A stretch of DNA of 64,000 nt. Source: Orbicella franksi. Taxonomy: Eukaryota. The notes beneath the pieces are model-generated. The model searched no databases, was not told the origin of the DNA, and saw nothing but the letters and a program-made list of their open reading frames with translations. A program made the translations under genes and the position numbers. Positions 1,371 through 18,075 of this stretch are shown here, one piece after another; within the stretch, counting starts at the first letter, position 1; every line of letters starts with the position of its first letter. The DNA is taken from contig OZ116704.1 in assembly GCA_964199315.1 (NCBI GenBank), positions 30,256,001 through 30,320,000 on the forward strand, in the 5' to 3' direction.

Positions 1371-4300
1371 TCACAGCAAAGCTAACAATTCAGGACCTGC
1401 TATCGGCAAAAGAAACGAGCCGATACGGCGAACGGTTGAAGAAACCTTATCCCATATGTAGCGAAGTGTAGGCTTCCGAACGCATCGTCCATAGATTTCA
1501 TTATCGTAGCCCTGTGAAAAATAAAATTCCCAGTCGCCGTTTCCGGCAATGATGACAAACTCTCCGCCAGGCTGGGTGAAAATGAAGGAAGCGTTGCTCA
1601 AGTCTCCTCCGACATCGATAACTTCCGGGATGAAAGAAATTGAGGCACGCAGAAATTTAAGAGTTGTTTTTCTTCTGTGGTCAAGGTAAGGGTGTTGCCC
1701 TTCATTCCCACACCGTTTTATAATCTCTCTTCCCAGGACTGGAGAGGTTATTTCTTTTACATGGATTCTGACGTTTGGAGAGTAATGCTAAGAAACAAAC
1801 AAAACAAAACAGTGAGTAAAGCCTACAGTTAGGTTAAACATCCACGCTCTTTTCAAGCTTTTGAAATGAGCCCATGAAAAGTTCTTGTTCTTTTGAAGGC
1901 CATCATGGCTTCACGTTTAAAGCACTGTACTCACCACGCCGGGAGGATTTAAAAACGAAGGTTTCACTCTGAAAACAAATTAACTGTTTTCCGTCCACAT
2001 TACGCCGGAGGATTTTGAAAACGCAACAATAATCGACCATTTTTGGACTTGTGCTTTAGGAATACTCAGTCAGGGAAATCACATTACTATCTTGATGCCA
2101 TCGTTTTCGAAAAGCTTTGTTTCAAAACGTTTTCCATCCACACGAAAACGGAAAGATGACGTTTTCAAACTCTTCTCGTTTGAAGAGCGTTTGGAATTTC
2201 GAAAAGCTCCGTTTAGTGTGGACGGTAAGCCTAACCGTAGAAGCAAGGCTGCGTTTTCAAATTCATCCGGCGTAGCGTGAACGGCGTCTACAAGCTGATC
2301 GTGGGACGTTGTTGATAAATTACCATGCGTTTGCAAATTACCTTTCCACTTACCGTAACTTTAGAGAATTATCGCTTGGGTTTGTTTTCTCGCTGGTTCT
2401 TAACAACCATACACTGATATAGGTTATTGATTAACACAAAATAGATGAAAGACAGCGAACAAGCAAGCGAGAAGGTAAGCCGTAAAAATCGAATACCTAA
2501 ACAAGGCAACAAAACTCGATTCCTTAATTTATTCTAAACTTAAAAGGCTGAACCCCTAGAGCAGCACTATTTCACGAAAGAGTGTTTTTTTATTTTTTTT
2601 ATTTTTTTATACCGAGCTGTAAGGTTATTTTCTGGTGCATCATTAGATTACAGACAGGAACCTGACAGTCCGTTCTCTATCTAGCTAATGGAGTTGACTG
2701 TAGAGAATAAACACCAAAACGACGTCAACTTTTTCTTGAATGTAGTCTACTAAAAAGGTTTATCGTCAATTGACATGCCAAGTTTATTATGGCATCATTA
2801 AGCTCCTAAAGATGATATAGCTGTGATTTAGCGGTGAAAAAAGGGAAAAAAAATTCAAGCGAAAATAAATAAATAAATAAGTAAAAAATAAAAGAAAATT
2901 CAACCGCAATCTTGGTATTTCTCTTCGAAATTTCCGACAAGCACCCCAATCCTTTTAATATGGGGGTTCTCCGTTCAATCCACCACGGTTTTTAATTTGG
3001 CTCGCACCCTCGACAATCGTTAGACAAAATAAATCTGTGAACTGTTAAAATTCCCTACGATGTGGTTTGCTTTTTGAACTTCATATGGAAAGATCCAATG
3101 CGTCTTGCATGAAAAGATGATGATCTTGTTTATGCCTGATTTGGTTTTGAGGTTTTTGCGGTTTAAGGAATAAATTGTCCAAATATTCATTTCTATAATG
3201 CTTGCTTTACTTGTGTTACTAACTTACAGCGATGCACACGGAATTGAAAAAAAAAAAACAAACAAACAAAAAAAACAAACAAAAAAACAAAAAAAAGAGA
3301 AAAGAATAAAATACACATTTAAGGACACAGAAGACTTGAAAACAGTATTATAAAAGATAAACCAACTGAGCACTTAACACATCCCTTTACTCTGCGCACA
3401 AATAGGGTAAATTCTACGTTAAAGACGAGAGCTTCCAAGTGTGGAAAAAAATTCTGATAGCCAGTTACTGTGGGAAGCATTTCAATTTGCTTAAAAATAT
3501 CACAATACTACCAATGCTAGTAAACAATTATCAAGGATTTAATTGTCAAAAAAAAGGTAATGAATTTGTGTACTGTCCAAATCGAATTTCTAGCTATCTG
3601 TGGTTTAGGTTGACGTGAGAGAAATTAGCATGAGGGCTGATATTGTTTGTTACTTTGTAAGCGGAAGATTTTAGAGAGACAATGTTCTTTGTTTACATCT
3701 CCTTTGCATACGCTAATGAGAAAAACCCCGATTATTTAGAGCTTAGCACAAGTTCTTAAATTTTGTTGAGATTTTCTTTTAAATAATTAAGTCATGTGGC
3801 TTCTATTACGTTTTTATTTTCAAACTATAGAAACAGTCATAGAGTAACAAAACAAACGGGTCTCGCTCCACTTCGCAAACATAGAATCGATTGTAGAAAA
3901 CAAGCCACCAGCTACCTTTAGGCGTGCATCATGCAACTGCCAAACTGAATGATTGCTACACTTAGCTTGATTAGTAATATGTTCCTTGATTAGTAATACG
4001 TTTCTGATCGTTGCTTGAAACTTATGAACTGAAACAATGCTGTCCGTTTTTAATTTGGTCGAAAAACGTAAGATGATCCCAGAAACAACGACATGCAGTT
4101 TGCATCATTGCATGTTTCATGGTGCAAAGCCTGGACATCAGTATACAGTGGAACCTCGATTTAACGAGCCTTTATATAATTAACTAAGTCTTCGATATAA
4201 CAATTTTCCTGGCCCCAGTAATAGTAAAATATATGGAAAAGAACCTCGATACAACGAAACCTTGCTAGTCCCTAGCTTGGCCCTTCGTTATATCGAGGTT

Positions 4301-4510
4301 CCACTGTATCTAGAAACAGACAGAATGTGCTATCAATAATTTGCTTACCTTTGTCACTCTATTTCGTCCAATCAAGTTGGACGATGGGTGCCCAATGCTA
4401 TCTCCTTTGTAGTGAGTGTGCGAGCCCATGTTCTTGCCGGTGTGGCGGGAGTACGCTGGCATGCCGCGCTGTCGATTGGAGTGCGATACTGTGCTGTGTT
4501 CTGTTCCCAT
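1371..4510 (-). CDS. Uncharacterised N-myristoylation-motif protein, paralog A (192 aa, 2 exons)
   Basis: Exon 1 is 4510-4349 (MGTEHS...RVTK, donor AAG|GTAAGC, phase 0). Exon 2 is 1787-1371 (acceptor TTTCTTAG|, HYSPNVRIH...GNEGQHPYL...PIAGPELLALL*), open throughout. Exon 2 is 417 nt, the same as in paralog B, and about 65% identical to it by manual alignment. Confidence 0.8.
1927..2290. mobile_element. Non-autonomous MITE-like repeat in the paralog A intron
   Basis: Degenerate inverted ends (CACCACGCCGGGAGG / TCCGGCGTAGCGTG) and internal TTTTGAAAACG-type repeats. No coding capacity. Confidence 0.5.
4146..4306. mobile_element. Tc1/mariner-pogo (Tigger-like) MITE, 161 bp
   Basis: TIR CAGTGGAACCTCGAT...ATCGAGGTTCCACTG flanked by TA on both sides. 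It sits about 40 bp inside the paralog A intron. Confidence 0.85.
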
Positions 4511-15975: not shown

Positions 15976-16021
<46 letters not shown>

Positions 16022-18075
16022 CTCGAGGAACTCTAAAACATTAAAATAATACTTTTTCTAAGACATGAACTGTTCAGATAGCCAAGTTCCCCGAAATAAG
16101 TCACTTTTTTAACCATCATGACAGCCCTCTAGGCCATCATGTAAATGCCTCGTCACGCAAAAGCTTAGAAATTCACGCGTAGTGTATCACAAAACCAAGA
16201 ACCCATTCGGAGCGAAAATTTGTATGAATATTAGTTTTCAGCTGCTCTTATACATTATTTAAGTAAAATTTCAGGAAGATCAATAGTTTTGTAGTTCGAA
16301 TTTTGGTGACGTCATGTGAAAACCAGCTATAAATAGACAAGCTTTTCGCAATAGCTGTTGTGTGACGTTGCGTCATGATATGTCGCCGAGTTGTTGTTTT
16401 TGAACAGGTAACATTTTAATGTTCGGATGGAATTTCAGTTCGTGAGGCTCTACCTCGACTCCCGCTTTGTGGGATTCTCCTTCCAATGCGACTTATGTTT
16501 CTTCACTGTTATTTGTATAACATGAAGAGTTTGTCCTCAAAAGCATGATTTTCTCGCGATGGATTCCACTGAAGCCCGCGGTCGAAACTTATAATCTGAC
16601 GTTATTAAGAGCTTTAGGGCTCGCAATACCGCGGTGTTCTTAGAGACTGTTTCGACAAATGCTACGGTGCCTCAAAGAAACTGTTCGTTTGGTTTTCGAA
16701 ATGCTCTTATTTGCAGTTCACTGTTAATTTAAGATAAGAATTGTAATAGGAATGTCAAAATTCGAACCATACCCAGAAAGCAAACAGAAACAAGTTTTCA
16801 TTTTTAGTGCAACAATCGCAGCCACGAAATACATGTACCTTAACCTAGAAATGTAAAACGATACAAGTGCCCGCAATACTGACTAATACAGTGATTTCAG
16901 GGGCTTAATGTACTGACCAGCAAAATTACTCTAAAAACCTCACGGATAATGGATGACGTCATTTGCATATTATTTGCATATTATACATTGTGGTCACCAT
17001 CTGTCTTCTCATTGGCTAAAAACCTACAGTTAATTCTGGGAAACAGCGAAACGTACAGATTCTTCACTAATCTTGCAGATTAGTGAATAATCAAGGTCTC
17101 GGTTAGTGTTATCAGCCTCAGCCTTCGGCTTCGGCTGATAACACTTACCTCGACCTTGCTTATTTCGGATATCACAAGAACCTCATCCAATAATTGTTTA
17201 TAATCTGCACCACAACATAAACCCCTAGATTGCTTACGCACTCTCCGGGTTAATGAAAGAACTCACTGACGTCATTGTTGAATAATCGGCGAGGAAAATC
17301 GAGTGGCATGACATCAATTATACAAAGATTGCATCGCCACTCTTTCATTGAGTAGAGTCTGGTAACTACAGTGTATGGGCAGCAAAAATGGCATGCGAAG
17401 CTGCACGAATGAGGGTGAAAAACTTGCGACAATTTTACTCAAAATAAAATTTTTGGAAGTTTGATTGATTTCCTTGCCTGTCGCCAGCGACAGGCTTGAA
17501 TGCTTTTTTAACTGCCGCTTCCGAAAATTATTTAAAATCGACGGGTAGGCAGGTGTTAATTTGAACCTTTGACTCACGAAGGGAAAGCAACACAAAACAA
17601 TTCAAACGTAATTATTAAAACGTTTCAAATAATGAAGCTGAATTTTTGCTAACATTATGATTTATATGCGATTTTAAACCTGATTGGTTATTGCCGCGGT
17701 GTCAATGCCGTGTAAGTCATTAAACTTCCTATATATTGTTCTTGGTTTTACAGTTACACTACGTAGATAAGTAGATATTCCTCTTACCTCTGCAAGTCTT
17801 GTGCGGCCAATATAGACCGACCCAGCTTGACTGTTATGTGTGTAGGAACCCAATTCTGCTCCCGTGTGGCGCGAGTATGCTGGTGTAGCTCTTTCAAGAC
17901 CCTGCTGATACTGATCATGATAATCAGAGTATGGCACCCCCGTCCTTGAAGTCCAAGATGTGTTGTCCATGGCTTGATAGCGTGAGCGTGTTGACTTCGG
18001 TCTTCCAGAACTCTGCTGATACTGGTAATCAGAGTATGTCCTCCGCCTCTCTGAAGTTGAAGATGTGTTGCCCAT
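7778..18075 (-). CDS. Uncharacterised N-myristoylation-motif protein, paralog B (234 aa, 2 exons)
   Basis: Exon 1 is 18075-17788 (MGNTSS...PAYSRHTGAELGSYTHN...RLAE, donor GAG|GTAAGA, phase 0). Exon 2 is 8194-7778 (acceptor TTTACCCTAAACAG|, QFPYIYPMSKITVPALG...PSLLALAAA*). Structure and phase match paralog A. The 9.6-kb intron join is inferred from that parallel. Confidence 0.75.
10636..11216. mobile_element. MITE-like element
   Basis: Ends ATATCGTTTTCACTGTCACG...CGTGAAAACTATCTAT. It abuts the next element. Confidence 0.6.
11960..13325 (-). pseudogene. Penelope-like retroelement reverse transcriptase, 5'-truncated and frameshifted
   Basis: ORF 12987-13274 has KIHK...RPIISGCEGPTE. After a frameshift near 13020, ORF 12016-12939 has DVTSLYTNIP, GTAMGTKMA, RYIDD and a PLE-type tail YRRGKSLKDILVRAKL*. 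No GIY-YIG domain follows. Confidence 0.88.
14270..14797. repeat. Tandem duplication of a 265-bp unit
   Basis: 14270-14534 and 14535-14797 share TAGTAAA...AACATCTCATACCAA...GAATTAGAATGTGGGAAACTTGCATT...GACGCCGTTGTTACGGCAATCA. Confidence 0.85.

What the first reader, a model, noticed from the sequence alone, without database searches (positions are those of the whole stretch)
1371..18075. Tandem pair of an unrecognised N-myristoylated protein family
Seen: two minus-strand genes with the same two-exon, phase-0 layout and equal 417-nt last exons that are about 65% identical in protein. Both start MGxxxS (MGTEHS, MGNTSS) and both appear intact. Established: Gly2 with Ser6 is the N-myristoyltransferase consensus. 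I recognise no known domain in the 192/234-aa products. Inference: a lineage-restricted membrane-targeted family. Tandem-duplicated, lipid-anchored small proteins with amphipathic tails are a pattern seen in innate-immunity effectors. This is the best candidate in the window for an undescribed system.
Basis: partly seen in the sequence, partly recalled or inferred. Interest (0 to 1): 0.75.

Follow-up and report, generated by a model that had tools for sequence, protein, structure and literature searches.

The report
Coral-only lipid-anchored small protein family
Two neighbouring, expressed coral genes belong to an undescribed protein family, named so far only in stony corals, that has a conserved signal for a fatty-acid (myristate) membrane anchor and a compact domain matching no known fold; its function is unknown and nothing yet links it to immunity.

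Summary
Two minus-strand, two-exon, phase-0 genes encode proteins of 192 aa (A) and 234 aa (B). Each has a 417-nt last exon and GT..AG intron ends. They are 57% identical over 178 aa, and 63-64% identical in the last exon. Intron-less transcript contigs confirm both splice junctions.

All full-length family models retrieved begin Met-Gly, and about 22 of 27 have Ser at position 6. This holds in Acropora, Montipora, Porites, Oculina and Stylophora, so N-myristoylation is a well-supported inference.

The genome has five loci: four intact and one probably a pseudogene. A and B are old paralogues (dS saturated), and their tandem order is kept in another coral. A is under strong purifying selection (dN/dS 0.08-0.19). 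B is less constrained (0.42).

The tails are hydrophobic, not amphipathic. No evidence supports the immune-effector idea.

Best reading: membrane-tethered cytosolic adaptors of unknown role.

The parts
4349..4510 (-). Gene A exon 1 (54 codons). Starts MGTEHS (Gly2, Ser6). Ser/Thr/His-rich and basic, probably disordered linker ending in the conserved I-G-R-x-R-V motif. GT donor at 4348-4347.
   Evidence: Read. The exon end is confirmed by the RNA contig joint. It is 94% and 89% identical to orthologues in L012 and L008.
1371..1787 (-). Gene A exon 2 (417 nt including TGA). Holds the conserved alpha/beta domain and a hydrophobic C-terminal tail.
   Evidence: AG acceptor at 1789-1788. Covered by the RNA contig. 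Orthologues are 92-96% identical with dN/dS 0.10-0.18.
1788..4348 (-). Gene A intron (2561 nt, phase 0, GT..AG).
   Evidence: Joint 1787->4349 skipping 2561 nt in run X1.
4511..4775 (-). Gene A 5' UTR as far as the RNA contig reaches. It contains short upstream ATGs.
   Evidence: X1 record 1 maps 4349-4775. Sequence read.
995..1370 (-). Gene A 3' UTR as far as the RNA contig reaches. Its distal part (995-1200) differs at 14 positions from the window and borders a high-copy repeat.
   Evidence: X1 record 1 maps 995-1787 (tables 3 and 8).
17788..18075 (-). Gene B exon 1 (96 codons). Starts MGNTSS. Contains an internal tandem duplication of about 105 nt that re-copies the N-terminal segment (second copy reads MDNTSW).
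   Evidence: Self-similarity of 18084-17980 to 17979-17869 seen through L006. The exon end is confirmed by the spliced contigs L006/L007.
7778..8194 (-). Gene B exon 2 (417 nt including TAA). Same domain plus a hydrophobic tail (Kyte-Doolittle 19-residue mean 1.84).
   Evidence: 98% nt identity to L006/L007. All of its sampled 31-mers are held by 18 runs, 4 of them on record as RNA.
8195..17787 (-). Gene B intron (9593 nt, phase 0, GT..AG), enlarged by mobile-element insertions including a reverse-transcriptase-like ORF at 12016-12939 (minus strand).
   Evidence: RVT_1 E 4.6e-5, below the gathering score.

Best explanation
A and B are two ancient paralogues of a small protein family. Every named member found so far is a stony coral.

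Each protein has three parts:
- An N-terminal Met-Gly-x-x-x-Ser signal. After removal of the methionine this should be myristoylated co-translationally by N-myristoyltransferase.
- A variable, probably disordered, Ser/Thr/Tyr/His- and Arg-rich linker. It ends in a conserved hydrophobic-Gly-Arg-x-Arg-hydrophobic motif just before the phase-0 intron.
- A compact domain of about 110 aa with the order strand, helix, short helix, long helix, four-stranded antiparallel sheet, then a long C-terminal helix whose end is hydrophobic.

The most likely working model is a cytosolic protein held on the cytosolic face of a membrane by the myristate, helped by the hydrophobic C-terminal helix (in B hydrophobic enough to be a tail anchor). 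The orphan domain is then presented as a binding or adaptor module.

Shown here: gene structure, transcription, splicing, family membership, conservation of the motif, purifying selection and the lack of any known relative.

Inferred: lipidation, membrane localisation and the adaptor role.

The conserved Cys/His residues are not invariant across paralogues, so an enzyme or an obligatory metal site is less likely than a binding module.
For: Gene models and splicing.

Family and range:
- 70 hits by word-indexed search, all named ones scleractinian.
- 70 representatives among 1.84 billion proteins by exhaustive phmmer.
- Profile searches add only unnamed or scleractinian hits: Montipora, Porites, Oculina, Desmophyllum, Acropora, Stylophora.

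Met-Gly start:
- About 27 spliced or annotated full-length models start MG, and about 22 of them have Ser at position 6.
- The two other intact paralogues in this genome start MGGNSGS and MGSDQS on their own upstream exon.
- Sequences that do not start MG are ORF-caller read-throughs from the intron.
- There is no N-terminal hydrophobic signal peptide (sequence).

Domain:
- Invariant or near-invariant residues were identified.
- The AlphaFold2 model of family member P0153 has pLDDT 91-97 over residues 31-130.

No known relative:
- Pfam: nothing.
- PDB profile search: E 1.1 only.
- Foldseek against PDB: best E 0.2-0.4.
- Swiss-Prot AlphaFold models: nothing.
- ESM Atlas: TM 0.5 or less.

Selection: dN/dS for A is 0.08-0.19 and for B exon 2 is 0.42. 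A against B gives 0.15-0.18 with dS about 2.

Tails: Kyte-Doolittle means are 1.1-1.8 and hydrophobic moments are low.
Against: - No lipidation or localisation data exist. NMT substrate status is predicted from sequence rules recalled from the literature, not from a predictor run here.
- Gene A has Glu at position 4 and few basic residues near the N-terminus, so it has no obvious second signal apart from the tail.
- The hydrophobic tail is not universal. Only 95 of 224 family sequences reach KD15 of 1.6 or more, and pocilloporid subfamilies have other tails.
- A few members have Tyr or Gly at position 6.
- Two raw-read polyA RNA runs under the same species label as X1 (organism A) gave essentially no reads on gene A at about 12% sampling, so its expression is low or conditional.
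- AlphaFold-cluster hits to two non-family proteins (E 1.8e-4 with TM 0.61, and E 0.05) hint that the fold may exist outside corals.
Confidence: 0.6

Rival explanations
1. Innate-immunity effectors. These would be lipid-anchored small proteins that act on membranes of pathogens or infected cells and diversify by tandem duplication.
For: B evolves faster than A (dN/dS 0.42 against about 0.1). Against its closest relative B shows 19 nonsynonymous to 2 synonymous differences. Pocilloporid relatives exist as many distinct 90% clusters. Expression of A seems conditional.
Against: - The tails are not amphipathic.
- There is no signal peptide, so the proteins are cytosolic.
- The genome has only five loci with no large expansion.
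- A is strongly constrained.
- The A/B duplication is ancient, not a recent arms-race burst.
- The 19:2 ratio does not differ significantly from neutrality (my binomial estimate, P about 0.09).
- In the tree most of that divergence lies on the relative's terminal branch (0.078 against 0.006).
- No immune domain or motif was found.
Confidence: 0.1
2. Tail-anchored membrane proteins. The C-terminal hydrophobic helix would be a true transmembrane anchor inserted post-translationally, and the N-terminal glycine would play a secondary or different role.
For: B's last 19 residues average KD 1.84, above the classical 1.6 threshold. The segment is preceded by Arg-Arg and lies at the very C-terminus. 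The model extends the last helix into this segment.
Against: A's tail averages only 1.1-1.4 and contains Pro, Gly and Glu. The tails are only 15-18 residues long and are interrupted by Pro-x-x-Gly-Pro. Many family members lack a hydrophobic tail or carry a zinc ribbon after it. Model confidence in the tail is low (pLDDT 46-60).
Confidence: 0.2
3. Soluble cytosolic proteins that are not lipidated. On this view the Met-Gly start is kept for another reason, such as methionine removal and N-terminal stability, and the family is simply an orphan domain.
For: There is no experimental lipidation. Some members have position-6 residues that do not fit the consensus (Tyr), and F at position 3 in the MGFKHY members is by recollection unfavourable for NMT.
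Against: Gly2 and Ser6 are conserved together in about 22 of 27 independent full-length members across both major coral clades, while the rest of the N-terminal linker is highly variable.
Confidence: 0.15

Closest known systems
N-myristoyltransferase substrates in general (for example Arf GTPases, recoverin-type calcium sensors, MARCKS; named from established knowledge, not tested here)
   Same: Met-Gly start with a small residue at position 6 and no Pro at position 7. Small cytosolic proteins. The linker has basic residues, and a myristate plus a second hydrophobic or basic signal is the usual logic for stable membrane binding.
   Different: No sequence or fold relation to any of these families. 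The folded domain is an orphan.
Tail-anchored / doubly anchored small membrane proteins
   Same: A hydrophobic segment at the extreme C-terminus, preceded by basic residues. B passes the Kyte-Doolittle threshold.
   Different: A's tail is below the threshold and is broken by Pro and Gly. The tail is not conserved across the whole family.
REDD1/DDIT4 (PDB 3lq9) and a Leviviricetes hypothetical protein (PDB 9hq8): the best structural rows
   Same: Two-layer alpha/beta sandwich with helices packed on a four-stranded antiparallel sheet.
Uncharacterised AlphaFold DB cluster entries A0A6J8E9Y4 and A0A210PXK3 (by accession prefix I recall these as bivalve proteins; unverified)
   Same: Foldseek E 1.8e-4, TM 0.61, rmsd 2.5 A over 108 columns for the first. 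E 0.05 for the second.
   Different: Only 20-21% identity. They were not found by any sequence search here. They are also unnamed, so they add no function.

Membership tests
N-myristoylated proteins (NMT substrates) | Initiator Met followed by Gly at position 2 | tested here: met
   A starts MGTEHS and B starts MGNTSS. All of about 27 full-length relatives and both other intact paralogues in this genome start MG.
N-myristoylated proteins (NMT substrates) | Small uncharged residue (Ser/Thr/Ala/Gly/Cys/Asn) at position 6 and no Pro at position 7 | tested here: met
   Ser6 and Thr7 in both genes. In the family, about 22 have Ser6, 3 have Gly6 and 2 have Tyr6.
N-myristoylated proteins (NMT substrates) | Covalent myristate on Gly2 and G2A-dependent membrane binding | not testable with these tools
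   This needs metabolic labelling or mass spectrometry.
Tail-anchored membrane proteins | A single hydrophobic transmembrane segment within about 30 residues of the C-terminus and no signal peptide | tested here: inconclusive
   KD19 is 1.84 for B and 1.12 for A. The segments are short and contain Pro and Gly. Model confidence there is low.
Any Pfam family or solved structure family | Significant profile or structure match | tested here: not met
   Helical hydrophobic moment is 0.24 (A) and 0.11 (B), with high mean hydrophobicity.
   dN/dS is 0.08-0.19 for A and 0.42 for B. One close pair gives 19 nonsynonymous to 2 synonymous differences, not significant. No challenge data were available.

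The most novel reading that the evidence does not exclude
A and B are founding members of a stony-coral-specific protein family with a previously unseen fold. The family would be lipid-anchored to a coral-specific membrane system, such as the symbiosome or the calcifying-cell membrane, or to a signalling platform. B-type copies would be diversifying. This would be a new membrane adaptor system that arose with the Scleractinia.
Probability: 0.15. Interest if true: 0.7.

Novelty: new variant of a known kind. Interest (0 to 1): 0.42.

Why it matters
Coral genomes hold many 'dark' genes that recur in stress and symbiosis screens but have no assignable function. This family is compact, conserved across the deepest split of reef-building corals and transcribed. 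It has a clear, testable biochemical handle: Gly2 myristoylation. Its confidently predicted domain has no structural neighbour.

This makes it a tractable entry point into coral-specific cell biology and a candidate new fold. It is not yet evidence for a new defence or signalling system.

Tried and rejected
- Pfam on both last exons and on three full-length relatives: nothing.
- PDB profile search: nothing.
- Structure searches with two models in PDB (Foldseek and VIA-align wide), AlphaFold clusters, Swiss-Prot models and ESM Atlas: only family members, two unnamed weak hits and noise.
- ESM Atlas feature search: best score 0.82, to zinc-dehydrogenase fragments. This is below the tool's trust level, so I rejected it.
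- Literature searches by eleven accessions or locus names and by keywords: no paper on the family.
- A Cys/His catalytic or zinc site: rejected as a family-wide feature. Cys26, His32 and Cys102 (numbered within gene A's exon 2) are each replaced in some intact paralogues, for example Asn for Cys102 in this genome's C7 17-Mb copy.
- Weak OTU-protease rows in Foldseek (E 0.5 or worse): treated as noise.
- The prokaryote-style promoter/terminator scan is not meaningful for this eukaryotic gene.
- Positive selection on B: the 19:2 count is suggestive but not significant (my binomial estimate), and most of that divergence lies on the relative's branch.
- No complex prediction was run, because no binding claim is made.
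Full report
OBSERVATION

The window contains no N. On the minus strand, gene A consists of exon 1 at 4510..4349 (162 nt) and exon 2 at 1787..1371 (417 nt including TGA). Gene B consists of exon 1 at 18075..17788 (288 nt) and exon 2 at 8194..7778 (417 nt including TAA). Both introns begin GT and end AG and lie between codons. The products are 192 and 234 aa and start MGTEHS and MGNTSS.

BLASTP of A against B gives 57% identity over 178 aa, E 2e-72. 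The last exons alone are 63-64% identical. The extra length of B comes from a tandem duplication of about 105 nt inside exon 1 that re-copies the N-terminal segment. In the window the second copy reads MDNTSW. In a close relative it still reads MGNTSW.

TRANSCRIPTION AND SPLICING

For gene A, a 1232-nt contig from a polyA RNA run (X1) maps to 995-1787 and 4349-4775. It has a single joint that skips 2561 nt, with ends CT..AC on the + strand, which is GT..AG on the gene strand. This confirms junction 4349/1787. It also gives a 5' UTR of at least 265 nt and a 3' UTR of about 376 nt.

A second run (X2, organism B) holds an unspliced contig across exon 2 and the intron. That is either DNA or pre-mRNA. 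Two raw-read polyA runs under the same species label as X1 gave almost no reads on gene A at about 12% sampling. Expression of A is therefore low or conditional.

For gene B, two intron-less contigs (L006 of 1025 nt and L007 of 973 nt, from two runs) align to 18085-17788 and then directly to 8196-7660. They encode P0173, which is 232 aa and 92% identical to B. A processed retrocopy cannot be formally excluded, but cDNA is the simple reading. In addition, 18 runs hold all sampled words of B exon 2, and 4 of these are on record as RNA.

FAMILY AND RANGE

The window's own genome is 497 Mb, and the window lies at C7:30.256-30.320 Mb. The genome has five loci with the domain:
- Genes A and B.
- An intact two-exon copy at C7:17.12 Mb, starting MGGNSGS.
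- An intact two-exon copy at C2:14.29 Mb, starting MGSDQS.
- A C14:20.1 Mb copy with substituted conserved residues, a frameshift in the tail and no Met-Gly exon within 9 kb upstream. This copy is probably a pseudogene.

The word-indexed search found 70 relatives. An exhaustive phmmer search of 1.84 billion representatives found only 70, of which 50 have E of 1e-10 or less. Two profile searches added more, but no named relative outside stony corals. Named sources are Oculina patagonica, Desmophyllum pertusum, Porites evermanni, Acropora millepora and A. cervicornis, Montipora capricornis and M. foliosa, and Stylophora pistillata. All are annotated 'uncharacterized' or 'hypothetical'. Most unnamed hits come from coral metagenome or transcriptome assemblies. 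Only about a quarter of proteins in these databases carry names, so 'stony corals only' is the best current reading rather than a proof.

Divergent subfamilies exist. One is a two-domain form of about 243 aa from Tara Pacific samples. Another has a C-terminal zinc ribbon with the spacing CX2CX3NX6CX2C. Neither is present in this genome.

EVOLUTION

The order B then A is conserved on a contig of another coral (L012), with both genes intact.

In a maximum-likelihood tree, A groups with its orthologues, including an Oculina gene (support 100/96). B groups with its orthologues and then with Montipora genes (98/88). Acropora sequences fall nearby. With dS of about 2 between A and B, the duplication is old and probably predates the complex/robust split. 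The node joining the A and B clades is weakly supported (85/66).

Nei-Gojobori estimates for A are dN/dS 0.08-0.19 against three orthologues at dS 0.18-0.29. B exon 2 gives 0.42 at dS 0.23. The L012 copy of B has changed near-invariant residues (GNGDWEF reads GNRNWKF), which fits relaxed constraint or divergence of B-type genes.

Against its closest relative, B shows 19 nonsynonymous and 2 synonymous differences. This does not differ significantly from neutrality (my binomial estimate, P about 0.09). In the tree most of that divergence lies on the relative's terminal branch (0.078 against 0.006).

THE LIPID SIGNAL

Among the retrieved sequences, those that are spliced transcripts or curated gene models all begin Met-Gly (about 27 sequences). 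About 22 have Ser at position 6, 3 have Gly and 2 have Tyr. The many sequences with other starts are prokaryote-style ORF calls that run from the intron into exon 2.

The remainder of exon 1 varies widely in length and sequence, apart from a hydrophobic-Gly-Arg-x-Arg-hydrophobic motif just before the intron. Joint conservation of Gly2 and Ser6 in an otherwise fast-changing region, across both major coral clades, is good evidence that the N-terminus is a functional N-myristoyltransferase substrate. The substrate rules are established knowledge that I applied from memory. No predictor was run.

There is no signal peptide, so the proteins should be cytosolic.

THE DOMAIN

A first model of A's exon 2 was moderate (pLDDT 74). 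A second model, of the full-length relative P0153 with a 70-sequence alignment, is confident in the core: pLDDT 91-97 over residues 31-130. P0153 is an orthologue of this genome's C7 17-Mb copy.

The order of elements is one strand, helix, short helix, long helix, four antiparallel strands, and then a long C-terminal helix whose confidence falls towards the hydrophobic end.

Invariant or nearly invariant positions cluster in four motifs: C-G-N-E-G-x-H, T-T-L-x-F-L, N-A-x-F and G-x-G-D-W-E-F. The conserved Cys and His residues are each replaced in some intact paralogues. I therefore do not propose a catalytic or obligatory metal site.

No Pfam family matches and no PDB sequence matches. Structure searches gave the following:
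- Foldseek against PDB: best E 0.2-0.4.
- Swiss-Prot AlphaFold models: nothing.
- ESM Atlas: TM 0.5 or less.
- AlphaFold clusters: two family members, plus two unnamed proteins at E 1.8e-4 (TM 0.61, 21% identity) and E 0.05.

From their accession prefixes I recall the two unnamed proteins as bivalve entries, but I could not verify this. They are a lead that the fold may be older than corals.

THE TAIL

The last 18-19 residues are hydrophobic, with Kyte-Doolittle means of 1.1-1.4 in A and 1.7-1.8 in B. Their helical hydrophobic moment is low (0.24 and 0.11).

B's tail could be a marginal tail anchor. A's is weaker and is broken by Pro and Gly. Across 224 family sequences, 95 have a tail window of KD15 1.6 or more, and a short Ala-Leu/Ile-Thr motif recurs in 56. 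The tail is thus a feature of some subfamilies, not a family-wide one.

INTERPRETATION

The best-supported model is a cytosolic protein tethered to a membrane by N-myristate. In A/B-type members the hydrophobic C-terminal helix would assist, and the orphan alpha/beta domain would be presented as a binding module. Lipidation, localisation and partners are inferred, not shown.

The immune-effector idea remains possible, especially for B-type genes, but it has no positive evidence here.

No paper mentioning the family or its accessions was found.

EARLIER NOTES

Earlier notes of this scan on the same window describe a foldback transposon at 11429-15938, inside B's intron. I saw a reverse-transcriptase-like ORF there. 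This explains the long intron but does not bear on the genes' function.

VERDICT

This is a real, expressed and conserved tandem pair of an undescribed, apparently coral-restricted family of N-myristoylation-signal proteins with a domain of no known fold. It is of moderate interest. It is a good target for a simple lipidation and localisation experiment and for a structure determination.

Noticed in passing
window 12016-12939 (-), within 8195-17787: The intron of gene B holds a 307-aa ORF with a weak reverse-transcriptase match (RVT_1, E 4.6e-5, below the gathering score) and a neighbouring 95-aa ORF. It is a retroelement remnant that helps explain the 9.6-kb intron. It overlaps the scan's separate note on a foldback transposon at 11429-15938.
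   Followed up: partly
window 17869-18084 (-): Exon 1 of gene B contains a tandem duplication of about 105 nt that re-copies the start-codon region (MGNTSSTS... then MDNTSWTS...). In a close relative the second copy still begins MG.
   Followed up: partly
window 4511-4775 (-): The 5' UTR of gene A, as defined by the RNA contig, carries three short upstream ATG-initiated ORFs. These are a possible sign of translational control.
   Followed up: no
window 801-1134, 2137-2303, 4141-4307, 5310-5643: Summed contig depth in the RNA runs is very high here (up to about 13,000, against about 15-22 on the gene). This indicates multi-copy repeats or transcribed mobile elements in the flank, intron and intergenic DNA of gene A.
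   Followed up: no
L012:12969-13052: In another coral's syntenic contig, a relic fragment similar to the C-terminal tail of exon 2 lies between the B and A orthologues. No such relic is present in the window.
   Followed up: partly
G000:C14:20125135-20125500 (L004/L026): The fifth family locus in this genome has substituted conserved residues, a frameshift in the tail and no Met-Gly exon within 9 kb upstream. It is probably a pseudogene.
   Followed up: partly
proteins P0072, P0204-P0227; P0138, P0185, P0191: Divergent subfamilies in other corals, probably pocilloporids. One is a two-domain form of about 243 aa that falls into many distinct 90% clusters in Tara Pacific samples. The other has a C-terminal CX2CX3NX6CX2C zinc ribbon. 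Both are absent from this genome.
   Followed up: partly
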